64,000 nt of DNA from positions 44,082,001 to 44,146,000 of the forward strand of contig NC_086386.1 in the NCBI RefSeq assembly GCF_036588685.1, given 5' to 3'. The translations under genes were made by a program, and so were the position numbers. Every line of letters starts with the position of its first letter. The stretch's first letter is position 1. Origin of the DNA: Mytilus trossulus (lineage: Eukaryota). Positions 36,341 to 59,900 of the stretch are shown here, piece by piece. The notes below the pieces were generated by a model. That model had not been told where the DNA came from. It saw nothing but the letters and a program-made list of their open reading frames with translations, and did no database searches.

Positions 36341-39300
36341 TAGTTATTTGTTATATTAGGATTTATTGTTAAAAATTCATTACTGCACATATGTACATAT
36401 ATGTATTTATGTATATAAATGTATGAGAGGGTGTATAAACTGTGAGATAGATTTACAATTGGAGAGAAGAATTGTTGTATGTTTGTATGATTTGAAGGTC
36501 GGAGTTCATCATGTTTATTGAGTGAAAATCTAATGATCGAAAATGTTTATTTTGTTCCATAGTCACTATTGTTTATGCACATTTAATTAATGGAATTAGA
36601 ATTAATTTATTTATTGTATATGAAATCGGGGTACAATTTTTAATTCACCAATTTTTACAATCGAAAAACAAACAAAAAACATATTAACAAATAAATATAT
36701 TTACTTTAGGACCTAGATACTTTGTGTTCCCAATATGAAATTTCATGGTTTATTCTGTGGAAGTTCTTCTGGACACACACCAAAGTTCTCAAAATATCAA
36801 ATAATTTTTTTTTTCTATAAGATAGATTCTGATTGGACTACATGAAATTGTATGAGATCCTTAATTATTGTGTTCTAGTAATGTTCATGCATGGTGAGCA
36901 ATATCAAGGCAGGATGAAAGCAAATCTTGCTCAAATGTTATAAAATATGTTTTCTTTCAATATTTGACAACGTCAAATGCAAGATTTTATGATTTCAAAA
37001 TAAATGTTTACTAGGTCCTTTAGATCGAATGAGTGCATTTATGTGTTTACATCATTCTTTTTTACTCTTACATACTACTATTGTTACTTGCCTTGATTTA
37101 GAACTTTTACCTATTTTCGTTTTGTGATACATGTATTGAAATGTCTAAAGAGTAAAAGTTCTTTCAGAAGAAAAATTGTTTATGCATACAACTTGCCTTT
37201 TAGTTACTGCATGTCATTAAAATGCCTTACTTTGGATTCATATAATTTCATGGATGTCAAATTTTGTGAATTGAAGAAAAATGTATTTATTTTGAACATT
37301 TAAATTAGAAGTCCACTTATGGCAACAAATTTGGTACCTCACTCTCACTAATATATATAAATTAACCCACTGTAATTAATTTCAGTGCTGTATTTCACAT
37401 CTCCTTCAATTTCAATCTTTGTTTGAGAGGTGAAAGGTCAATCACAAATAACTTTAATCATAAGATGTTCTATCAATGCTATTTTAATAATCTTGTATCA
37501 ATAACCTTGGCTATGTGGGGGTAAAATGGCAGGCTACTCTAGATCTTTTGCCATCATTTGTAAACCTTTTTGGTTGCTATTAGTTGTTTGGCTACTGTCT
37601 CCAATGATATTTTCTATTTACTTTTATTCATTTGATAACATTTCATTGGTTAAAGGTATGATGAATCAAATATATAATTCTAAACATTTAAAGGTGTATG
37701 TTAAAAGGTTATTTACAGAATATATATTTTTTTTTCATTAATTAGCTTATGCCTCATATATACAAATGGAAGTAAATGATGTTGTTACTATATACAATGT
37801 TTATCAGAACGTATTGTCATACACATAAGGAATGGTAGCTCTAAAATTAACCAGAATGTAATTGTCAAATAACCTTTCGGCCAAACATGTGCATGTTCAC
37901 TTTATGAAGAGCTTTAGATACTTGGTGCATATAAATAAGTGCTGCTCATATGTGCAATTAATTATAATTTAGTTGTTTTTGTATATTGAAATGATAAATT
38001 TTCTGATTCTGTGTCCTTACTTTGCTAACAAGGATCTGACAAACACTTCTTTTTTTTGAAGACCCTTTGGGGTCGTCTTGATTTGTCCTAATGCTACATA
38101 ACTGCAAAAATTTGAAAGGCGAAATTTTATTGGCTAACTTAATATTTACTGGAACAGAAAGTAAAATGGGGTTTGTCAAGTCTTTGTAAGCAAAATGATG
38201 ACACATGATCTGTAGTTTTATTATCATATTGTTTTTATATCTGCCTATTTTGTTATAGAAAATGTGTAATGATGGATACTGTATTTATGATTGAGATACA
38301 TTAAAATGGGTTAATTCCTTAGATTTTAAGTTTCCTGATTCAAAAGACCAAACCATATTTCAAGGATTTAGTTGTGTATTTTTTGTTGTCTTTTATTCTG
38401 TTCTTTCTTCAAGATGAGATTTATGTGGGGATATTTTTGGAGATTTATTCTGAATCTTCAAAATTCCCTGCTTACCAATAAAGGAGAAGTGAAAATGTAT
38501 TTAATATTAATATAACCTTTTCTCAAAAGCTGAAAGAATGAGTTGGTGAAGGTTCCTACAATTCAAATGCTTAGCTATCATTTTTTTGAAGGGTTCCCAT
38601 CCAATAGCATTTAATTTATTTCTAAGTAAGAAAAATAGTTGAGTATACATCCAATGCTTAAGACTATATGACTTTCTCGATAGTTTCCTTATTTCATTTG
38701 TTTTCTTGTTATAGCACAAACTATTAATTACAAAATGAAACTACAACAAAAAGAGATAAAGATTATTTTCATTTAAGTTTTATTAAAATGAACATTCCAT
38801 CACTTGGATATAAGAATTTTGAAACCAACTTGTTGATTGTAACTTATTTTAGGATAAGATATAGATGTGAAATAATAACTTAAAGTAAATTGTAGATATT
38901 ACCAGAATGTTGCCATTTACATGTGCAATATTTTGTGTGATTAATTGTTCTATTTTTTATGTCTACATCATAATCTGTGCTTGAAATGTATGTTGGAAGA
39001 TGGACATTTTCACAAACATTATTATGAATAAAGACTTCTTATCAATTAATGTTGGGATTTTCTCTAATAATTGTATTCAACAAAATTTGACAACTCCATT
39101 AGACACAAACACATACTCCTACACGTATATACACCACACATTGCTTGATATAAGAAAAGCCAAGCATTAAATCTAACATTAATATATATGATGTTTACCT
39201 TATAGTAGAAATGGTTATTAATGTTACAAAATTCAACTCTATTATGAGAACAAATACTGAAAAGAGAAATGTGAAAAAATTGAGGTACAATTGTGACGTA

Positions 39301-39827
39301 TATATTTCTAGAAAGATTTGCTAAACTATTTATATGTGATATACGATTTTGCATTTTACGAGTCATTTGAATAAACTTGTATGAAACATTTCTGAATTTG
39401 GTGAGTGATTTGAGATATTTTCTAAGTAGCAGAATTATAGATCATCGTTACACCGGTTTTTAGGAAAAGATTTCATGAAATGCATTCAAAACCTTATGGG
39501 ACTGACTTGATATCTAAATGTTCCAAGGCTGATCACTACCTTTTTTGATGCACAAAACATAGTGCATTGATAATAACACTTTATACATACTATCCATTAA
39601 CACATTGTAACATTTCCCAAAATTTATCGATGTAATAAATGCTCTGATATTCAAGACACAAAATGATGTTTCACTTGTCAAGAAAATTACAAAACTTTTG
39701 CAAGGTGCAGGAATCTTATATCTGTTCTAAAAATATGAATTATGTCATTGTTAACCTCATCTTTAAAATTGGAATTATCTTCCTTCGTCTAGAATAGCTG
39801 TTAAATGAGTAACAACCAATGCAATAT

Positions 39828-40799
39828 TTAAGGTAGCACAATACAAACCTTTTAAGCTCACCTGGCATAGCCATGTGAGCTTATGCCATCACTTGGCGTC
39901 CGTCGTCGTCCATCGTCGTCTGTCGTCGTTGTAAACTATTTCATCTATCAGCCCTGAAATTTTCAGATGAATCTAACAATCCATTGTTGGGTTGCTGCCA
40001 CTTAATTGGTAATTTTAAGGAAATTTTGCAGTTTTGGTTTATTATCTTGAATATTATTGAAGATAAAGATAAACTGTAAACAGCAAAAATGTTCAGCAAA
40101 GTAAGATCTACAAAAAAGTTAACATGACCAATATTGTCAATTGACCGCTTAAGGAGTTATTGCCCTTTAAAGACAAATTTGCTCTATTTGTTCATCAAAC
40201 TTGCTTAAATTAAAAAATCTTCTCCTCTGAAACAACTGGGCCAAATACTCTCAAACTTAAAATGAATAGTATCTACTTTCTAAATTGTATCCGAAGTTTT
40301 GATCCATCAAGAAACATGGCCGCTATGGCTAAAATTGAACATAGGGGTCAAATGCAGTTTTTGGCTTATATTTCAAAAACTAAAGCATTAAAAGCAAATT
40401 TGTCATGGTTAAAAATGTTCAATAGGTCATGATCTATCAGCCCTGAAATTTTCAGACGAATCTAACAATCCATTGTTGGGTTGCTGCACAAATCTTAGAC
40501 ACGGTTTTGGAGGTCAAACTGTGTTGTGCAAGAAACTATAAAATATTTTGGGATGCTATGAAGAACAAAGACGCTAAATTCATTCAAGAGTGAACATCAC
40601 AATATATCAACTAATTACATAACAATTAATTATGTAATAATAATGTCATAGTGAAATTATCACAATTTGAAAGATTAATCTTTCTTCTTTCTTTTGGTAC
40701 CTCATTTATAAAATATAAAGAAGGATGAAATGAATTACATCAGTTTAAAGTTGTCTGATTGGGAGTGAACAAATCTTTGTATTGTGTGTGCTACCTTAA
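39828..40799. mobile_element. TTAA-flanked non-autonomous DNA transposon (Kolobok/piggyBac-like)
   Basis: TTAA-ggtagcacaatacaaa ... tttgtattgtgtgtgctacc-TTAA terminal inverted repeats. Confidence 0.65.
39850..40487 (-). mobile_element. Helentron/HINE-like element (inverted copy) nested within a TTAA MITE
   Basis: Reverse complement of the 9395-10208 family, with (gtc)n tract and terminal hairpin at 39855-39880. Confidence 0.7.
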
Positions 40800-40999
40800 T
40801 TTTACTTCCCACTGATAAATTGAAGCAATTTTTACCGTTCGATGCTTTCAAGCACTTTGATTAACATCATGGGACAGATCCAGTCATTTTTAAAGGGTGC
40901 TTTCGAACCCAGGATAAAAGGGGTCCAACTGTGTGTCCCTATTCAAAAGCATTGATCATAAAAAAAAGGGGATGTGCCCAATCCCTGGATCCTCCACTG

Positions 41000-41730
41000 A
41001 GTACAATAGGAACGATACAGAAGTCTTGCAGAGTGAGAAGTCAAGAAAAGACAAAATACCATATTAAAAGTTAAAAAAGAGGATATACATTTTGCAAAAT
41101 CTTCATATCTGTATGATGAGCCACAGATGCAACACAATGACTCAGTTCGAAAGACTGAACTCATATTTCCAAGCTGTATTCCATATGCCAATAACTGCAA
41201 CAAAACTCACTGAAAAGCTAAAATACGACAAAAATTGGCATGTCTCATCCACTCATAGCAATGTCTTTATGTCATTTAATAGATTACCGTTGTAACAACA
41301 AGGTTTGAATGGATCGTTAGATTGTTAAAAAATTATAACAAAACCAGATTTGAAACGGATTGTCAAAATGTTTTTATTTTATAACACAACCAGGTGAATG
41401 GCTAAACATACTATCAACAATACGCAATGATCCTTATTTGGTTTCTCTGATAGTTCTAATCTTTCAGGTTGTGATTGATAGATGCATGCTGATGTCAGCA
41501 TTTATTATGCAGCACGTATGCACGATCAATAAAACATTAGTTTACTTAAACGACTTACTTTTATCCCTTCAAAATGTCCACTTAGTAGGTATAGCCTAGT
41601 TGATACAACTTTGCACTAGTAATACTATTTTAAATATACCTTGTTACAATGGGTTGACTACTGTCATCACATTTACCTTTTTATGTGTTCTTTTGTGTTT
41701 GTTATAACAATTATTGATTCTTTGGAAACA
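41000..41730 (+). pseudogene. Decayed paralogue fragment of the C-terminal half of the 44.6-47.8 kb gene
   Basis: KCFYFITQPGEWLNILSTIRNDPYLVSLIVLIFQVVIDRCMLMSAFIMQHV aligns with LCLQYIRQPHEWLNIPVIVRNLMFIISLIVLAYEAVKDDSVLMSAFIMQYL. KSSYLYD/TATKL/FMSFN align with KSSFIYD/TATKF/LMSFN. Contains frameshifts and deletions. Confidence 0.8.
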
Positions 41731-42940: not shown

Positions 42941-44661
42941 ACAATACATATAAACTTCATATGCAATCTAACGGATATGGCATCATTTATAAGATTCAGC
43001 GTCTTAGTGGGCACCTTTACTTTTTTTTGATAACTCCAGTTATACTGCCAGTAACTTGTGAGGAAAATTTACCAATAAACGAATTGTAAGTTGTAGATCC
43101 ACAATCGCACAGTTACCTGGATAACTGAAGGTGTGCAATGAGATACTTCCTCTCTCGTGCACCTCTCAGGTCAAACAAGTTTAAAAATGAAAAATAAAAG
43201 TAAAATGATAAAACTACACTCCTACACCATGTACACCTATAGGTACTTAGGCCGTATACTTTTTGCTTATGAAATGATAGAAATGATGTGACAAATTAAA
43301 TGAAAAAGTCATTTCACTACAGCACAGTGTTAAAGAGTCCGATTTAGTCAAGGATCTTATTGCAATAAATTTCAAAACCTTCATTGTTATAAACAAAATG
43401 AACCTAACAAGTATTGATTATAATATTTATCATACATTAATAATAAAAATTATCTTATAAGCTAAAAAAAAAGGAACACAAATAACAATTAAAGAGAGGA
43501 ACATCATTGTACTTCCCGCCCTCAAAAGTAATAATGTAATAATAGAGAAACAGCAAACCATTGATATCTCAGTCCAGCGTGTTGGTGCATGCATCAAACG
43601 ATTTATTTATAGAACATAAGTCATTTGTATCTACATCGTCATTGGAAAATAAACCATGGATCAGGCAAATAACACTGAACATTTTATAACATATGTATTA
43701 CTTGAATAATAAGACATAGCAGACAAAATATGTTGATACTTCGAACATTTTAGAATATCGATCATTATTATTTATTGTGATTTTAGCATGGTCCTATACC
43801 TTAACAGTTGTAAATATACACGGTAAAATATGTTGATAATATGTACATCGATGACGCTGACATTACTGTTGTGGTATATATGCAATTATTGTTACAATAG
43901 TATCAAATGATACAATATCAAAGTATCAAAATTGTTTTTTTTGGTTAAAAATAACTTAATTCAAAATATTCAAAGCCCTATAATCCAAATTATACAGTAG
44001 TTTTGGTTGATCGAGTTAAGTTTTAACGTATAATTTTGTATTTTAAACCTGAAATTTGATCATATAACCATGTCGATAAAATAATATGTGAATAAAATGA
44101 AACAGTATGTAGCATGTGTAGTAAGTAAACACAAAAACATCATGCATTACGTCTCTGAGATATTTCGCTAAGCAAAGGAGGTCTTGGTCACTTTATTGAT
44201 GTAAAAATGTATTAAAAACAGGTAAAGAAACACAAACTTTTCTTCAGCTTGTTTACATAAATTTTATTTGGATAGTCAAACAAATGTGCATCGAAATGTA
44301 GGATAAAAATGGTGTATGTTATTGTATAAAATCGCAGTCCCATTCAAAATACAATGATCGAGTCTTGGGATATTCGTCAACTGTAAGTCTGTGTTAATTT
44401 TCTAATTGTTTAGGAATTGACTAGAAATATTTAGAGACAATGTAGCCCTGCATGTAGTTTAACTTTATTAACAACACAATCCGACATACACTGTGGTTTC
44501 ATTTTAATTCCAATTGCACATGGCATTCAATAACCAGAAAACATTTGTATAAGTATATTGAAGTTTTATAATTGATTTTAATACGAACATTATGAACAAA
44601 TACATATCATTGAGATGTAAAATTCAACAACATGAAAATGCATTTGTTAAAATATTTCTAG

Positions 44662-47600
44662 ATAACTCAAACGAAGGAAACAGTCAACAGCCTTAATTTT
44701 AACAGTGCACCGAAAGCATGTCCTGATAATATCGCCAAGTTTTGGAAAAATACCACCGGAGACCTGCAGGCCCTAGGAATGCATTTAGATGACACCATTA
44801 CAGTAACTTTTGGAATAAAGAAATCTCCAGTAATTGACACAAAAAAATCAAACCCTGTACAAGCAGCAGCCAATAATTTAGGTGGCGGTCACCATGCAGT
44901 GATTTTAAAACTAGAAGATAAAGACAAGTGCACCATTTTCTACATTTGAAAATGCCTGTACCAAGTCAGGAATATGACAGTTCTTGTCCATTCGTTTTTG
45001 ATGCGTTTTGTTTTTTGATTTTGCCATGTGATTATGGACTTTCCAAATTGATTTTCCTCTGAGTTCAGTATTTTTGTGATTTTACTTTTTAAACTTGAAC
45101 TTATAGTTGACGAAGACGTATGTTCTGTTAAGAAGAACTTCAAATGTCCGAATGAGGAATGTAACTTTCAAACCTCCTTTTTTTCAAAACTGGCCAACCA
45201 TCATTTTTTGGAACACGTCGGTCCAGAAGGAGAAAATATTCATTACGAGTGTTGTGGTCATGCATTTAGAAATTTTCAGTCTTATTGTCAGCATCAATAT
45301 ACAAATCATTCAACTAAAGGGGAAATACAATTAAAATTTTATCACATTCGGGAAAACAATTTTGAGAATTTTCTAGATCATGTTCAGTATTTTGGAGCAT
45401 ACAAGAAAAACACAACTTTAAGACAGGTGATGCAGTGTGCAGTTGACATTATTTTAAACTTTGGTAGATATTGGGTCTACTGCTGGAACTGTCAGGATTT
45501 TGCAACTTGGTTGCTTGTCCTAGTTGGAGTTCCTCTGAGAAATGTAGATCCTACATTAGCAGACAAACTTACAGGATCTGGTACAAAAATTAATGCAAGG
45601 TCAATACAGCAAAGTAAGGAATCGTATTTATAAAAAACACACAATGAACTTGAGATGCATGATTTAACAGACTGGAAAGGAGGTACTATTTGCGGTGAAA
45701 GCGGATGTAAATTTTTACCACCCATGTCACTGGAAGCATTAATACGGCATACAAAGGTTGCACACAATGGCGACAATATATCAGGTTTGCAAGCCGTATA
45801 ATACCATTTATTTTAGAACTATTAAGATAACAAAATTAAAATATATTCATTTAGAACTAAGTTTTTTTTATGCATAATGATACATTCTGTTGCAACGTTA
45901 TTCTTTTTTAAAATAGATCTTTAGAATTTCTTTTATTGTGCAAACATGAATAAAAATCCGCTAAATTGAATATAATTAAAAATACGCCACATTGTACAAA
46001 ATGTTTCAGGTTCATCAATGGATGATATGTTCGATGATTTCCTGTACACTGTGTCTGGGAGTCATATGGACATTAATTTAGATGTTAAATTAAAAAGAAA
46101 ATATTCTCTCTATCAGCTCCGTGGTACTGATATATGCTCCCATACGTCGATTGTATTTAGTCCATGGACTTCAAGCATTGAATCTAACATTCACAAATAC
46201 GATTTTTATCACACAGCAGAAATGGTAATAGATGGTACAAAACGCAAACCTCTGGTGAGACCAATAACTGAAGAACGCCATGTAGAAAACTTGAGGTACA
46301 TTTGTCATATAGATATTTCGACGGAAGAACTCTTAGACTATATGAATGTGATTTACAAAATAACATTTAAATATTCATCAGATGAAAGTTGTATGGCATT
46401 TTTTGTGAACTTGCTGGCTGCTTTGAGATACTTTCGTGAAAGGAAAATTGTAGTTTCATCAATTAACGAGGGTCTTTTGGCAGAATATGAAAATTACAGA
46501 AGACTGACAGACATTAAAAAACGACGAAATGCTTTATTAAAAATAATTGATTTTTTTTCACTGAATCAAGAGTTTCAAGGGGAGATACAAGTTTGGAAAT
46601 CTTCCTTTATTTACGATTTTCCGAAATGCAGCACAAAAACGTCGTCCGAAAAGTTAAAAGTATATGCAAATGCTATAAAACATTTAACTGCAACAAAATT
46701 CAATGAAATGCAAAGATCAGGTAGAGAAAAATGGGTAAGTCTTCATCCACTGATATCAATGTTTTTGATGTCATTCAATACGATAGGAGAGTTGTTTTTG
46801 TCCATGTATTTCGTTTTCACTGTACTTCTTATACTAAGCTTTGGATTACCGTTGCTACCAAAAAAGGATATGAATGGATTAAAATTATGTTTACAGTATA
46901 TAAGGCAACCTCACGAATGGCTAAACATACCTGTAATAGTACGTAATCTTATGTTTATAATATCACTAATAGTTCTAGCATACGAAGCTGTAAAAGATGA
47001 CTCAGTGCTAATGTCAGCTTTCATTATGCAGTACTTATGGATAATTTGCATTACATTAGAATAAGATGTATCTAAACGAGTTCTCACTATCCATGAAATG
47101 ACCCTTAAAAACGTCCCTAAGCGTATAGTTCAGTTGATACATCTTGGCATAAGGAACAACATTTTCAGATTCCCTGTTGCTGTTGTCTTAGTCATACCCT
47201 TATCACCTTGTCCGTATGTGATTTGCTGTCTTATTATTTTGATAATAATAATTTGTTCTTTAAGAAAAGTTGGTGAATATCTTCTCACTGGGGGACTCTC
47301 AATTAGTCTTTTTACATGTCAATATGTAAGAATAACAAATCATTGCATTGTATTCCTATATATGTTGGCAATCGCCAGCATTGGTATCCAAGGAGTCATT
47401 CGTATAACGGTTTTTCAATTCTCAAATTATCACTGTTTTGCTATTTATATATACACAAGTTTATCATGGTATAGACCACAGAAAAATAACTTAATCATCT
47501 GTAGAAATATGGCCACTACTTATAATACTGCTGTTGAAAGAGATATCATAAAATCACATGAAAAGAAATTGCTTAGTTCATGGTTATCAATTTTTCACTC

Positions 47601-47832
47601 ATCAGTATTATTTTCAATGCTCACGCTCCATGCGATTTGTTTAGTACCAGTTATATGTGTATGCATTTTTGATGTACATACTTGTTTATGTATCACATTT
47701 ATTACCCTTTATGTGCATTGTCTCTTGCTTTATTTCACTATTGACCTTCGATATGTTATCAAAGAGCTTTTCAGTGGTCCGTTAGAAAAGTACACACTTC
47801 TCAATCAAACAGATAAAACTAAAATTTCCTAA
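44662..47832 (+). pseudogene. Disrupted gene: two permuted papain-like (NlpC/P60; PPPDE/LRAT-like) domains + 3 C2H2 zinc fingers + multi-pass TM domain (~930 codons)
   Basis: One reading frame starts at the acceptor at 44662 (..GGGHHAVILKLE), crosses a SINE-like insert (44931-45090), continues as ORF 45076-45633 (two C2H2 fingers, YWVYCWNCQDFA), passes an in-frame TAA into a third finger (CGESGC..LIRHTKVAH), and splices through a phase-1 GT-AG intron (45785-46009). It then reads ORF 46018-47064, a second in-frame TAA, and ORF 47098-47832. Upstream exon(s) not identified. Confidence 0.75.
44931..45090 (+). mobile_element. 5'-truncated SINE-like repeat inserted in a coding exon
   Basis: Closely matches 57067-57227 (aaatgcctgtaccaagtcaggaatatgacagtt...cagtatttttgtgattttactttt). 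Confidence 0.88.
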
Positions 47833-48017
47833 CCCAGTGTATTGAAAAATCTTATTCCAGAAATTGAAATTGCAAGCAAGAACATTTGTTATAAAGTTAA
47901 TGGATGATGCAAGTTTAATAGTACGAATATGAATGTATAGCAAAGTCAGACCCTCAAAATGATGAATTTTCATTCCATTTTGTTACAATTTCTGTAATTA
48001 CAGCCAAAACTTTTCTA

Positions 48018-56900: not shown

Positions 56901-59900
56901 GTTTATACATTTCGAATTATTGTTATACGATGATGACTGATGTACCCATATTTTGACTATTTTATTTATTGTGTCTGTTTATTTAACGCATCAATGTAAA
57001 TATAACAGAATTTGATGAGACTGTCATTAAAGTGAGAGGGTTAGCACTATAGAACCAGGTTTAATCCACCGTTTTCTACATATGAAAATGCCTGTACCAA
57101 GTCAGGAATATGACAGTTCTTGGCCACTCGTTTTTTATGCGTTTTGTTATTTGATTTTGCCATGTGATTATGGACTTTCCGAATTGATTTTCCTGTAAGT
57201 TCAGTATTTTTGTGATTTTACTTTTTATTCAAACTAGTAAGCCTATCTTTTAATTTCCAAAAAGACGTCTGATATCGCGATATCATTGCTGAAACAATTA
57301 ATACGTCTTTGTTGACAGTCGGAAACTATTTTCTGTTTGAATACAATTTTTATTACGTCCATATAAATGTTCTACAAGTCGACAAAGAACTAAAATATAT
57401 TAAGTCATTACTTTTTTTTTGTTAAAGAAAACAGCTTTATACGGTATAACTATTATTAGATTACTTACCAATTTAGTACATGTTATTTACATTCTTTAAC
57501 TATATTGAAAAGTCAATAAAAAAGAAAAAGAGAGGCCAAAGGTACCAAGGGAACATTCAAACGCATAAGTCAAAAATAAACTGAAGACGCCATCAAAATA
57601 AAAAGACCTTTTAGACAAACAACAGTTTAGAAAATACAACATAGGTATCTAAGATTGAGCGGCACGAACCCAATCAAAATCTGGGGGACATCTCATGTTC
57701 TCCGGGAGGATGAGCAGAAAAAGTGAGGGATACACACGAGACAACAGTTAATGAATTTGGAGGGAGTGAATCGAGCAAAATCGACACGAAGGCGTTTTAA
57801 TTTCTTTATTCTCCTTCAGTTAAGTTTCTGTCGGGGATGATCAAAGAGCTTTAAAATTTCAGTAGTTATGAAGTAAATTTACTATATTTACATGTAATTT
57901 ATAAAGGCGATGGGGTGATGAAACGATGCTTGAAGAAATAGATGAATTGAAGAACGAAATATCAACGCTTCAGAAACAATTAAAAGAATCTCGTCTTAGT
58001 AAAATAAAAGAAGTTAAAGCTACAATTGTCCAGGCACAGCACCAATTTCATTCCGCAAAACAAGATTTTGAACTAAGGTTAGTCTCGTTAAAAAAACATG
58101 TTCGTCATTACGTCATTAGATACATAAATTGATATGTGTTCAAAGTATTTTCACTTGTATTAGAGAAGATATTGAATAAGAACCATTTATTAATTTTATA
58201 ACGCAATTAAACTATGATAAAATTGAAAAAATGAAGTTTAAATTACGTTTTAGCAAACAGACTACTTTTATAAATATCTAGACTTGAAACACAGGCTGAG
58301 TAGGCATATCAGCAAGTAGATACACACTAAATGCACTTCCTGTATATATATATGTGTGTTTATGCAGGGTTGGTGCTTTATAGTTTCATGCACTCTGTGA
58401 GTACAATTGTCATATGTATGAACTATTCCACGGAAAACTTTAGATTTAGCAATTCGAACGCCAAACTCAAGCTTTGAGTGAACGAATGTTTTGCCTTATG
58501 TGTTGCTCATTGACGTACAAATCCGGTATAATGACTCATTTGGTTCTTACAATCGATGAAAAGAGAACGGGATTGTTGTTACAACTGAAACATATCCGTG
58601 ATCATCTGTGATACAGGCATAATATAATGGTCAAGCAACGAATGAAAACGTCAGTTAGATTAGATTTTTAGATTTTAACAGCCGTCCTTATTCTGTCGAC
58701 ACACCCCAGTCTCTCACTTTTGAAATTCATTAGTTTTATTCGGTCTTTCTAACTTGATTGTTTTGTATCTTGATCATGGATTTATGAGATTTGAACACTG
58801 GTCAACTACTTGTGTCTCTCCATAGCTCTGTTTGATGGATAGTTTTGTCTACACACAAATGATTAAAATTTGAACCTAAAGTTCAGTTCATATGTAACTA
58901 CTGCAAATGTATACAACAGTAAGTTTGTTTTACAATATTGACTTAATTGAGAATTCTTAAATCTAAACGAAAACTTTACATGTTCGTTTTGTCAGGAAAA
59001 TGACAGTTTGATAAGTGACTTTCGGTTTTGAATTTTCCATAGAGTTTGGTAATTTTGTCAATTTACTTTTGTACAATAAGTCATATTTGAATATTCTATT
59101 AAAGAGTTGAGAAAACAGAAAAGGAATTATACATGCTGAAATCACATCTCATTGATCTTCAGGCTGAGAACGAAAGTCTGCGGCAGAAAATGAGGAATGC
59201 AAAACTTCTTTTTACAGAATGGCACTCCACAAGCTCAAGGTACACACACGTTATATTTTGTTTTAGTTCGCATTGGTAAGCCAATGTATGCCCATTTTGT
59301 TTTCTGGAGGTAAATATGCCGTATGACATGCATCCCTTTTCTTGATACTGCCGTTCCTAATGTTCTCTATGATAAAATCGGACTTAAATCAATTTCATGT
59401 TTGAAACTGATGTCACATTATAGTGATTGCTATTGCAATGAAGCCCAGATTATAACGGCACGCTCTTTAGGTGAATCAACAATACCATGCTTTACTTTAC
59501 TTTATGTAATTCCGAATTTAAGTTTGAAATTTTACCTTGACAAGTTCCAATCGAAAAAATTCTACAAAGCATTTATTCGGAGATATACTTAGTATAAATA
59601 AGAAACGGTAGTCGAATACAAACTGATAAAACCATGAACAAACAAAGCAGTAAGAAAAAAGCCAACAGTTTTAAAAAAACACTTTAAAGAAGACTTAAGA
59701 CTGAGAAACATAAACCATCGCAACTTGGAGTATTCAATACTTTAAACTGAATAAAAGGACAAATACAAGTGTCATTTCATTAAGTATAAAACCGTATATC
59801 GAAATGGTTAACTATTTGCATAATCTTAAAAAAGAGATATTTATACAGTTTTATAAGTACCAATATATGTATTTTTTATGATTTTTTCAGGGTATCTTCT

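What the first reader, a model, noticed from the sequence alone, without database searches (positions are those of the whole stretch)
44662..47832. Hidden ~930-codon gene: tandem permuted papain-like domains with embedded zinc fingers fused to a multi-pass membrane domain
Seen: three ORFs from the track and two unlisted stretches join into one frame through a phase-1 intron. Domain 1 has GGGHHAVIL..FKLELIVDE..YWVYCWNCQDFA, and domain 2 has SHTSIVF..HTAEMVIDG..KYSSDESCMAFF. Known: His-before-Cys order with a Y-x(4)-NC-x-x-F motif is the signature of circularly permuted NlpC/P60 thiol enzymes (PPPDE/DeSI isopeptidases, LRAT/PLAAT acyltransferases). Seen: two C2H2 fingers sit between the putative catalytic His and Cys of domain 1, a third lies between the two domains, and roughly 9-12 hydrophobic segments follow. 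Inference: a membrane-anchored double thiol hydrolase/acyltransferase with an architecture I do not recognise, possibly a lineage-specific family.
Basis: partly seen in the sequence, partly recalled or inferred. Interest (0 to 1): 0.85.

Follow-up and report, generated by a model that had tools for sequence, protein, structure and literature searches.

The report
Broken mussel gene for membrane thiol enzyme
This stretch is a damaged copy of a real, expressed mussel gene of about 930 codons; the gene belongs to an undescribed animal protein family that joins two papain-type cysteine-enzyme domains, three zinc fingers and a many-pass membrane anchor.

Summary
Window 44662-47832 (+) is one reading frame. 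It is broken by a 155-bp high-copy repeat with in-frame stops, by two TAA codons, and by a phase-1 intron.

It is the counterpart of intact, annotated but uncharacterised proteins: Mytilus galloprovincialis, 931 aa, 95.5% identical; M. californianus LOC127714607, 926 aa. Distant full-length relatives occur in a pearl oyster and in horseshoe crabs, so the family is not mussel-specific. No Pfam family reaches threshold.

Four public runs (three RNA-like, one DNA-like) lack the insert. They read GAA at the second TAA and GT where the window has a GC donor after a newly found 9-nt first coding exon (43656-43664). The window therefore carries a null haplotype of an expressed gene.

- **Domain 1:** conserved His78/Glu96/Tyr220/Cys227 parallel the catalytic residues of CLN5 and PPPDE1. 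Its best structural matches are DeSI-1, CLN5, TseH, a picornavirus 2A protein, BcPPNE and YiiX (Z 5.9-2.5), all of the NlpC/P60 superfamily. LRAT is the recurrent sub-threshold Pfam hit.
- **Domain 2:** conserved His/Glu/Cys, the right strand-helix order, and a weak in-register profile match to domain 1. Its fold could not be searched alone.

Most likely function: a membrane-anchored Cys-His acyl-thioester hydrolase or transacylase.

The scan noted other LRAT-like multi-domain families elsewhere in this genome, but not this one.

The parts
43656..43664 (+). Probable first coding exon, ATG GAT CAG (Met-Asp-Gln). It is followed by a GC donor at 43665-43666.
   Evidence: Orthologues start MDQ|ITQ. 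The pattern hit lies 1 kb upstream on the right strand. Other individuals read T at 43666, which gives a canonical GT donor. RNA-like run X1 covers 43601-43768 while the rest of the intron has no depth.
43665..44661 (+). Intron 1 (inferred), ending in the AG at 44660-44661.
   Evidence: RNA-like runs X1, X3 and X17 have zero depth over 43794-44528, while the DNA-like run X22 has about 20 over most of it. The sequence context is shown.
44662..45784 (+). Exon 2: domain 1 (a permuted NlpC/P60-like domain) with two embedded C2H2 fingers, followed by finger 3. It carries the insert and the first TAA.
   Evidence: It aligns to residues 4-325 of P0029 and P0047.
44890..44892 (+). Codon of the conserved domain-1 His (His78 of the orthologue P0044).
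   Evidence: This His is present in every homologue that covers the site. It lies at the start of a predicted strand.
44932..45086 (+). A 155-bp fragment of a very high-copy interspersed repeat, with in-frame stops. It replaces the 2 bases (GC) that complete Cys-Ala-Phe in intact alleles.
   Evidence: The joint 44931>45087 with 'GC' between is seen in all four runs. Depth in the insert bins is 3e3 to 2e6. Loose ends show that longer copies exist elsewhere. A second copy lies at about 57070-57235. The own-genome DNA search skipped it, probably as too common.
45139..45216 (+). Zinc finger 1 (C-x4-C-x12-H-x4-H), inserted in the domain-1 sheet.
   Evidence: Read from the sequence. The PDB profile search hits C2H2 fingers. 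The model shows a beta-beta-alpha unit at residues 120-135.
45244..45309 (+). Zinc finger 2, atypical (CC-x12-H-x4-H). The Limulus relative has C-x2-C here.
45469..45501 (+). Active-site motif YWVYCWNCQDF. The Tyr codon is at 45469-45471 and the Cys codon at 45490-45492 (Tyr220 and Cys227 of P0044).
   Evidence: Y220, W225, N226, C227 and D229 are nearly invariant across 22 sequences. The Pfam LRAT alignments end here, at profile position 114-115 of 120.
45631..45633 (+). Premature TAA where the orthologues have Tyr.
   Evidence: P0044, P0045, P0047 and P0005 read SYLYKTH, and P0029 reads SYFYKKH. The state of this codon in the four runs was not shown.
45691..45765 (+). Zinc finger 3 (C-x4-C-x13-H-x4-H), between the two domains.
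   Evidence: It is conserved in Pinctada, Limulus and Tachypleus. The model has a helix at residues 307-318.
45785..46009 (+). Intron 2, phase 1, GT..AG. Retaining it gives the 329-aa soluble isoform that ends GLQAV.
   Evidence: The spliced forms P0029 and P0047 read NISGSSMDD. The retained forms are P0028, P0044 and P0045. Depth drops here in X1 and X3.
46010..47832 (+). Exon 3: domain 2, a helical linker, the multi-pass membrane region, and the stop at 47830-47832.
46093..46440 (+). Domain 2 core. The codons are His at 46141-46143, Glu at 46219-46221 and Cys at 46390-46392.
   Evidence: H44 is invariant, and E70 and C127 are nearly invariant, in 14 sequences. The model has five strands, then a helix, then the Cys at a helix N-terminus. 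An hhalign comparison with domain 1 is in register.
46747..47748 (+). Membrane region, about 8-10 hydrophobic helices.
   Evidence: Hydropathy scan. The region is conserved in P0007, P0013, P0032, P0025, P0043 and P0048.
47062..47064 (+). Premature TAA. Other individuals read GAA (Glu).
   Evidence: T>G at 47062 in all four runs. P0047 reads ITLEEDI.
39163..41641 (+). Decayed relic of the tandem paralogue (the type of M. californianus LOC127714713). It comprises domain-2 and first membrane segments, with frameshifts and a gap of about 1.5 kb.

Best explanation
Gene structure: the region is a three-exon mussel gene with coding parts at 43656-43664, 44662-45784 and 46010-47832. It is the orthologue of M. 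californianus LOC127714607 (926 aa) and of a 931-aa hypothetical protein of M. galloprovincialis.

Protein: it has no signal peptide. About 590 residues are therefore presumed cytosolic, followed by about 8-10 membrane helices.
- Domain 1 is a circularly permuted NlpC/P60 (PPPDE/CLN5/LRAT-like) cysteine-enzyme domain. A pair of C2H2 fingers is inserted between its strands.
- A third finger follows.
- Domain 2 is a diverged second copy of the same kind of domain.

Function (inferred, not shown): Cys227, activated by His78 (held by Glu96) and with Tyr220 at the oxyanion position, forms an acyl-thioester intermediate. The enzyme would remove or transfer acyl groups from S-acylated proteins or membrane lipids at the cytosolic face of a membrane. 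The fingers would serve as substrate- or partner-binding modules. Retention of intron 2 gives a soluble isoform of domain 1 plus finger 3.

State in this assembly: the gene is a null haplotype with four lesions. These are a GC splice donor after exon 1, a 155-bp repeat insertion with stops inside domain 1, and two TAA codons.
For: Identity and intact orthologues:
-.
- Piecewise identity is 95.5% to P0047 and 86% to P0029, with no frameshift.

Expression and null state:
- All four runs skip 44932-45086, read G at 47062 and read T at 43666.
- Three of them cover exons but not intron 1.

Domain 1:
- H78, Y220, W225, N226, C227 and D229 are conserved.
- LRAT PF04970 scores 13-18 bits in the window piece and 7 of 10 relatives, always ending at the NCxxF motif.
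- The AF2 model has pLDDT 69.9 and pTM 0.74.
- In the VIA-wide search, six of the top 16 rows are NlpC/P60-superfamily proteins, most of them permuted. They are 2wp7 DeSI-1 (Z 5.9, 121 aa, rmsd 4.4), 6r99 CLN5 (Z 4.9), 6v98 TseH (Z 4.6), 7zv6 Aichivirus 2A (Z 3.4), 3kw0 BcPPNE (Z 3.0) and 2if6 YiiX (Z 2.5).
- The His-to-Glu spacing of 18 and the Tyr-to-Cys spacing of 7 resemble CLN5 (His166/Glu183) and PPPDE1 (Tyr101/Cys108) (PMC9012467, PMC3142127).
- CLN5, PPPDE1 and PPPDE2 are reported Cys-based palmitoyl thioesterases (PMC9012467).

Domain 2:
- Conserved H/E/C and the predicted topology.
- hhalign score 19.75, P 0.02, with His on His and Cys on Cys. None of 40 column shuffles reaches that score.
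- PPPDE clusters appear among the language-model neighbours at 0.91 and 0.89.
Against: - All structural Z scores are under 6. The tool warns that Z under 8 may reflect only a common arrangement. Foldseek found nothing.
- No Pfam family reaches its cut-off, and PPPDE PF05903 is not hit at all.
- The model has pLDDT under 50 at residues 221-225, just before the Cys.
- Glu96 is replaced by Gly or His in two relatives.
- Domain 2 lacks the Asn before the Cys and has no conserved Tyr. Its fold search was swamped by the helical tail.
- Substrate, membrane, topology and zinc binding are all inferred.
- The runs are only guessed to be RNA.
- The state of the first TAA in other individuals was not seen.
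Confidence: 0.7

Rival explanations
1. Same gene and fold, but the enzyme is an isopeptidase for ubiquitin or a ubiquitin-like modifier. It would be a membrane-anchored DeSI-like deconjugase, and the zinc fingers would bind the modifier.
For: The best structural match is the deSUMOylase/deubiquitinase DeSI-1, 2wp7. The C97/PPPDE proteins are classed as deubiquitinases/desumoylases in PMC10318531. From my own knowledge, zinc fingers next to papain-like deubiquitinases have precedents such as ZUP1.
Against: PMC9012467 reports very low peptidase activity but efficient palmitoyl thioesterase activity for PPPDE1 and PPPDE2. Permuted NlpC/P60 enzymes have hydrophobic S1 pockets (PMC3142127). LRAT is the only recurrent Pfam hit. 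The multi-pass anchor fits lipid chemistry.
Confidence: 0.2
2. One or both domains are catalytically dead, and the protein acts as a membrane scaffold or receptor.
For: Domain 2 lacks the NC motif and the Tyr. In the same genome the scan noted 'double-LRAT' genes whose second domain has Ser in place of Cys. Model confidence is low near the domain-1 Cys.
Against: His and Cys are kept in both domains from mussels to horseshoe crabs, at 20-35% overall identity.
Confidence: 0.15
3. The lesions are assembly errors, and the gene is intact in the assembled animal.
For: All four runs examined and all annotated orthologues are intact at the insert and at 47062. One high-copy repeat could be misplaced by an assembler.
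Against: There are four independent lesions of different kinds. They sit on a haplotype that also differs from the runs at roughly 2% of sites. Base substitutions are not the usual long-read error. An older M. edulis gene model of the same gene (P0005) is also broken.
Confidence: 0.1
4. The ORF chain belongs to a transposon or virus-derived element, not to a host gene.
For: The top language-model neighbour of domain 2 is a cluster of giant-virus hypothetical proteins. PPPDE domains also occur in viruses. The family's distribution is patchy.
Against: It is single-copy in the 1.3-Gb genome apart from the adjacent relic. It has introns and RefSeq isoforms that are conserved between mussels.
Confidence: 0.03

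Closest known systems
PPPDE/DeSI proteins (MEROPS C97, Pfam PF05903; PDB 2wp7, 3ebq)
   Same: Both have the permuted order His .. Glu .. Tyr-x6-Cys with an NCxxF-type motif. This family gives the best structural match (Z 5.9, 121 residues). Both are cytosolic thiol enzymes.
   Different: There is no Pfam hit to PF05903. DeSI proteins are small and soluble, about 170-200 aa, with one domain, no zinc fingers and no membrane region. The match has rmsd 4.4 A and 7% identity.
CLN5 (PDB 6r99), a Cys-based S-depalmitoylase
   Same: It is the second-best structural match (Z 4.9, 148 residues). The pattern His166/Glu183/Tyr258/Cys280 parallels His78/Glu96/Tyr220/Cys227.
   Different: From my own knowledge, CLN5 is a soluble, glycosylated lysosomal lumen protein. 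The mussel protein has no signal peptide and has a polytopic anchor. There is no detectable sequence similarity.
LRAT/PLAAT (H-rev107) family, Pfam PF04970
   Same: It is the only recurrent Pfam hit, aligned through the NCxxF motif. Both are membrane-anchored acyl-enzyme chemistry on lipids.
   Different: All scores are below the 24.3-bit cut-off. LRAT uses a Cys-His-His triad (PMC10318531), whereas the residue at that place here is Glu. From my own knowledge, LRAT/PLAAT proteins have a single C-terminal helix, not 8-10.
YaeF/YiiX/BcPPNE lipid amidases (C92; PDB 2if6, 3kw0)
   Same: Both have the permuted fold with a His/Glu/Tyr/Cys arrangement (PMC3142127). Both appear among the structural matches (Z 2.5-3.0).
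   Different: These are bacterial, single-domain proteins, and the Z scores are very low.
Other multi-domain LRAT-like families noted by this scan in the same genome (s1-820565, s1-826801)
   Same: They are tandem permuted thiol-enzyme domains. One family also sits on a polytopic anchor, and they are arranged in tandem arrays.
   Different: They are not close relatives. Domain 1 of this gene finds only itself in the genome at E<=0.001. Those families are described as true LRAT/PLAAT (His-His-Cys) domains without embedded fingers. I did not inspect their sequences.

Membership tests
Permuted NlpC/P60 superfamily (PPNE sensu Xu et al. 2011) | The catalytic His lies N-terminal to the catalytic Cys, and the Cys is at the N-terminus of a helix that follows a five-stranded sheet. 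| tested here: met
   Domain 1: His78 is before strand 80-85 and Cys227 is before helix 230-237. Domain 2: His44 is before strand 45-51 and Cys127 is at helix 127-143.
Permuted NlpC/P60 superfamily (PPNE sensu Xu et al. 2011) | A polar third residue on the strand after the His. | tested here: inconclusive
   Domain 1 has Glu96 in FKLEL in most sequences, but Gly in Tachypleus and His in P0016. Domain 2 has Glu70 nearly invariant, though hhalign pairs the domain-1 Glu with Asp64.
Permuted NlpC/P60 superfamily (PPNE sensu Xu et al. 2011) | A conserved Tyr shortly before the Cys (the oxyanion position). | tested here: met
   Domain 1 meets this: Tyr220 is nearly invariant and lies 7 residues before Cys227, as with Tyr101/Cys108 in PPPDE1. 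Domain 2 does not: it has no conserved Tyr.
Permuted NlpC/P60 superfamily (PPNE sensu Xu et al. 2011) | Structural similarity to solved members. | tested here: inconclusive
   For domain 1, six superfamily members are among the top 16 rows, but Z is only 5.9-2.5 and Foldseek found nothing. Domain 2 was not tested alone.
LRAT family (Pfam PF04970) | The Pfam gathering score of 24.3 bits. | tested here: not met
   The best score is 17.8 bits (P0032). The window piece scores 17.2 bits, E 0.0067.
LRAT family (Pfam PF04970) | A Cys-His-His triad, with His as the third residue (PMC10318531). | tested here: not met
   The aligned position is Glu, Asp, Gly or His, and it is Glu in nearly all sequences.
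PPPDE / Peptidase_C97 (Pfam PF05903) | A match to the Pfam model. | tested here: not met
   No hit at E<=1 in the 5 window pieces or the 10 relatives. The only links are a structural match and language-model neighbours.
C2H2 zinc finger | The spacing C-x2-4-C-x12-H-x3-5-H and a beta-beta-alpha fold. | tested here: met
   Finger 1 is canonical. Finger 2 has adjacent CC. Finger 3 has x13. The PDB profile hits are all C2H2 (best ZNF410, E 0.0068). The model shows beta-beta-alpha units. The Pfam zf-C2H2 cut-off is not reached. Zinc binding was not tested.

The most novel reading that the evidence does not exclude
This is an undescribed animal enzyme family: polytopic membrane proteins that carry two permuted papain-like thiol domains, with a C2H2 finger pair built into the first catalytic domain. 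Such proteins would deacylate or transacylate membrane-bound substrates. The family is kept in bivalves and horseshoe crabs, and in mussels it segregates as natural null alleles as part of the 'dispensable' gene set.
Probability: 0.35. Interest if true: 0.6.

Novelty: new variant of a known kind. Interest (0 to 1): 0.5.

Why it matters
Cysteine-based deacylases of the PPPDE/CLN5 type were recognised only recently, and the known ones are small soluble proteins. A family that fixes two such domains to a many-pass membrane anchor, and builds zinc fingers into the catalytic domain, would extend that enzyme class to a new architecture. It would also give a Pfam-less family a testable function.

The window offers a natural knock-out allele next to intact, expressed alleles in the same species group. 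That is useful for genetics in an animal where gene presence/absence variation is already known to be extensive (PMC7653742, found; I did not read its text).

Tried and rejected
- **Splicing out the insert:** by hand, the nearest GT (44928) and AG (45106) do not keep the frame. Other individuals simply lack the insert.
- **Foldseek against PDB:** no match at E<=0.001 for either model.
- **Sequence profiles against PDB chains:** only C2H2 fingers.
- **VIA-wide on the exon-3 model:** the list was filled by generic helical matches to residues 234-350, so domain 2 was not tested.
- **pdb_via on the domain-1 model:** only CLN5 again.
- **ESM Atlas on the membrane region:** no usable hit.
- **Own-genome DNA search with the insert:** empty, probably because its words are too common. 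Copy number was judged from read depth instead.
- **Shuffle controls for hhalign:** two long runs failed. A short one of 40 shuffles ran.
- **Joined conceptual protein:** Exons and pieces were searched separately by reference, and natural intact orthologues (P0044, P0029, P0047) stood in for the whole.
- **Transposon or viral origin, and a chance ORF chain:** both rejected.
Full report
**What is in the sequence**

The window is AT-rich animal DNA, 29-40% G+C over the stretch profiled. It lies in a 1.3-Gb assembly at G000:C14:44082001-44146000. Translating 44662-47832 in one frame gives a continuous protein-like sequence. It has these interruptions:
- a TGA at 44947, followed by a stop-rich stretch to about 45087;
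- a TAA at 45631;
- a GT..AG interval at 45785-46009, whose removal keeps the frame with a split Gly codon (phase 1);
- a TAA at 47062.

Each piece was searched by reference, and natural intact orthologues were used for whole-protein questions.

**It is a known-but-unnamed gene, and its family is wider than mussels**

The exon-3 piece finds Mytilus proteins only.

An exhaustive HMMER search with the M. coruscus relative P0004 finds 24 representatives. Cluster look-ups name the following:
- M. californianus LOC127714607 isoform X1, 926 aa (P0029);
- its retained-intron isoform X2, 329 aa (P0028);
- Pinctada imbricata, 868 aa (P0007);
- Limulus polyphemus, 871 aa (P0013);
- Tachypleus tridentatus, 915 aa (P0032).

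Further searches add these:
- M. edulis isoform X3, 329 aa (P0044);
- Limulus isoform X2, 340 aa (P0046);
- an M. galloprovincialis 'hypothetical predicted protein' of 931 aa (P0047).

The five window pieces align to P0047 end to end at 95.5% identity, and to P0029 at 86%, with no frameshift.

The full architecture is kept in the oyster and the horseshoe crabs. It consists of domain 1 with two fingers, finger 3, domain 2 and the membrane tail. None of these proteins carries a Pfam domain in the precomputed tables, and none has a functional name.

**The copy in this window is a null haplotype of an expressed gene**

I laid contigs of four public runs on 43500-47900.
- Runs X1, X3 and X17 cover the exons but have no depth in 43794-44528, and reduced or no depth in 45852-45998. 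They behave like RNA, although the tool only guesses their kind.
- Run X22 covers most of the introns at even depth, like DNA.

Findings common to all four runs:
- Each has a contig that joins 44931 to 45087. In X22 the letters GC stand between the two sides, which restores TGC GCT TTT (Cys-Ala-Phe). Every orthologue reads the same.
- Each reads G at 47062, turning TAA into GAA (Glu). P0047 also has Glu there.

X1 and X22, the only runs that cover the place, read T at 43666.

The skipped 155 bases have a depth of 3e3 to 2e6 and many divergent loose ends. A second copy lies near 57.1 kb. They are therefore a fragment of a very abundant interspersed repeat. Other copies extend further on the 5' side.

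The first TAA (45631) stands where all Mytilus relatives have Tyr. One search did not show its state in the four runs.

The first coding exon is probably ATGGATCAG at 43656-43664. It encodes the MDQ that precedes ITQ in the orthologues. Its donor in the window is GC, and T at 43666 in other individuals gives a canonical GT. Its position is supported only by the sequence match and by one low-depth contig in X1.

In total there are four lesions on one stretch and no frameshifts, so the inactivation is recent or allelic. An older M. edulis gene model of the same gene (P0005) is also broken, in different places. This hints that null alleles may recur, but it is only a gene model.

Just upstream, at 39163-41641, lies a much more decayed relic of the tandem paralogue, with frameshifts.

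**Domain 1**

Across 22 sequences, Y220, W225, N226, C227, D229 and W233 (P0044 numbering) are nearly invariant. The His of the G-H-x-(A/S/T/D)-V motif is present in every sequence that covers it.

Pfam gives LRAT (PF04970) as the only recurrent hit. It appears in the window piece (E 0.0067) and in 7 of 10 relatives. It always ends at profile position 114-115 of 120, which is the NCxxF motif, and it is always under the 24.3-bit cut-off.

An AF2 model of the M. edulis 329-aa isoform, built with a 22-sequence alignment, has pLDDT 69.9 and pTM 0.74. Foldseek finds nothing for it.

The exhaustive VIA-align search puts NlpC/P60-superfamily proteins at ranks 1, 2, 3, 5, 6 and 16:

| Rank | Protein | PDB chain | Z | Aligned residues | rmsd (A) |
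|---|---|---|---|---|---|
| 1 | DeSI-1 | 2wp7 | 5.9 | 121 | 4.4 |
| 2 | CLN5 | 6r99 | 4.9 | 148 | 4.8 |
| 3 | TseH | 6v98 | 4.6 | 108 | 4.1 |
| 5 | Aichivirus 2A | 7zv6 | 3.4 | 105 | 4.0 |
| 6 | BcPPNE | 3kw0 | 3.0 | 112 | 5.2 |
| 16 | YiiX | 2if6 | 2.5 | 110 | 4.8 |

These Z values are low in absolute terms. The argument rests on four things that agree: the enrichment of one superfamily at the top of the list, the recurrent LRAT hit, the motif, and the residue pattern.

The residue pattern H78/E96/Y220/C227 compares with published catalytic residues as follows (PMC3142127 and PMC9012467):

| Protein | His | Glu | Tyr | Cys |
|---|---|---|---|---|
| This family, domain 1 | 78 | 96 | 220 | 227 |
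| CLN5 | 166 | 183 | 258 | 280 |
| PPPDE1 | 38 | 47 | 101 | 108 |
| BcPPNE | 49 | 64 | 127 | 154 |

The two fingers fall between strands of the sheet. The model folds them as separate beta-beta-alpha units. Among PDB chains, the sequence profile finds only C2H2 fingers.

**Domain 2**

In 14 sequences from mussels to horseshoe crabs, His44 is invariant, and Glu70 and Cys127 are nearly invariant (numbering of the exon-3 piece).

The AF2 model (pLDDT 63, pTM 0.49) shows five strands, then a helix, then Cys127 at the N-terminus of the next helix. That is the core order Xu et al. describe for permuted members.

A profile-profile comparison of domain 1, with the finger columns removed, against domain 2 gives a score of 19.75 and P 0.02. 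It places His on His and Cys on Cys. None of 40 column-shuffled controls reaches that score; their maximum is 17.9.

The language-model neighbour search lists PPPDE clusters at 0.91 and 0.89. By the tool's own calibration this is only a lead.

The structural searches of this model were swamped by its helical tail.

Domain 2 lacks the Asn before the Cys and has no conserved Tyr. It may be a weaker or regulatory copy.

**Membrane part**

Hydropathy gives about 8-10 helices between 46747 and 47748. The region is conserved in the full-length relatives and in proteins that have only domain 2 plus the tail (P0022, P0043, P0025, P0048). It matched nothing known.

**How it most likely works**

What is shown:
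- the gene structure and the intact orthologues;
- coverage in RNA-like runs;
- the lesions in the window copy;
- the conserved residues.

What is inferred: there is no signal peptide, and zinc fingers need a reducing compartment. The N-terminal 590 residues should therefore face the cytosol, next to the membrane. The two nearest structural relatives, DeSI and CLN5, are reported Cys-based palmitoyl thioesterases (PMC9012467), and LRAT/PLAAT enzymes form acyl-Cys intermediates on membrane lipids. I therefore commit to a Cys227-His78 acyl-thioester mechanism that removes or transfers acyl chains at a membrane surface.

My rough odds are:

| Reading | Odds |
|---|---|
| Domain 1 is catalytically active | about 0.75 |
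| Substrate is a lipid or an S-acyl group | about 0.45 |
| Substrate is a Ub/Ubl isopeptide | about 0.3 |
| Other substrate | the rest |

**Comparison and novelty**

This is a new family and architecture inside a known superfamily. It is not a member of the LRAT family: the score is under the cut-off and the third residue is Glu rather than His. It is not a member of Pfam PPPDE, which gives no hit.

The scan's notes list other multi-domain LRAT-like families elsewhere in this genome. Domain 1 finds only itself in the genome, so they are not close kin. I did not examine them.

In the papers I searched and read I found no description of a permuted papain-like domain with embedded C2H2 fingers on a polytopic anchor. 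That is a limited search, not proof of absence.

**Limits**

- Only contigs were laid, not raw reads, and the run kinds are guesses.

Noticed in passing
window 39163-41641 (+): A decayed relic of a tandem paralogue, closest to M. californianus LOC127714713 (P0002) and M. coruscus P0004. It keeps pieces of domain 2 and of the first membrane helices, in shifting frames, with a gap of about 1.5 kb. No domain 1 was detected.
   Followed up: partly
window 57070-57235 (+): A second copy of the high-copy repeat that interrupts the gene. It extends further 5' than the copy in the gene. Read depth implies thousands of copies or more in mussel genomes.
   Followed up: partly
P0028, P0044, P0045 (Mytilus) and P0046 (Limulus): A soluble isoform of about 330-340 aa that ends just after finger 3 is annotated in both mussels and Limulus. 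In the mussels it arises by retention of intron 2 (ending GLQAV). An anchor-less form of domain 1 may therefore be a conserved product.
   Followed up: no
P0022 / P0043 (unnamed source): These relatives lack domain 1 and instead end in a Cys-rich C-terminal stretch after the membrane region. It may be a further zinc-binding module. Their taxon is unknown.
   Followed up: no
window 44693-44698: A 6-bp in-frame indel relative to the other individuals and the orthologues (NSLNFNSAP in the window, against NSLTNAP or NSLTSTP). It is harmless and marks the divergent haplotype.
   Followed up: no
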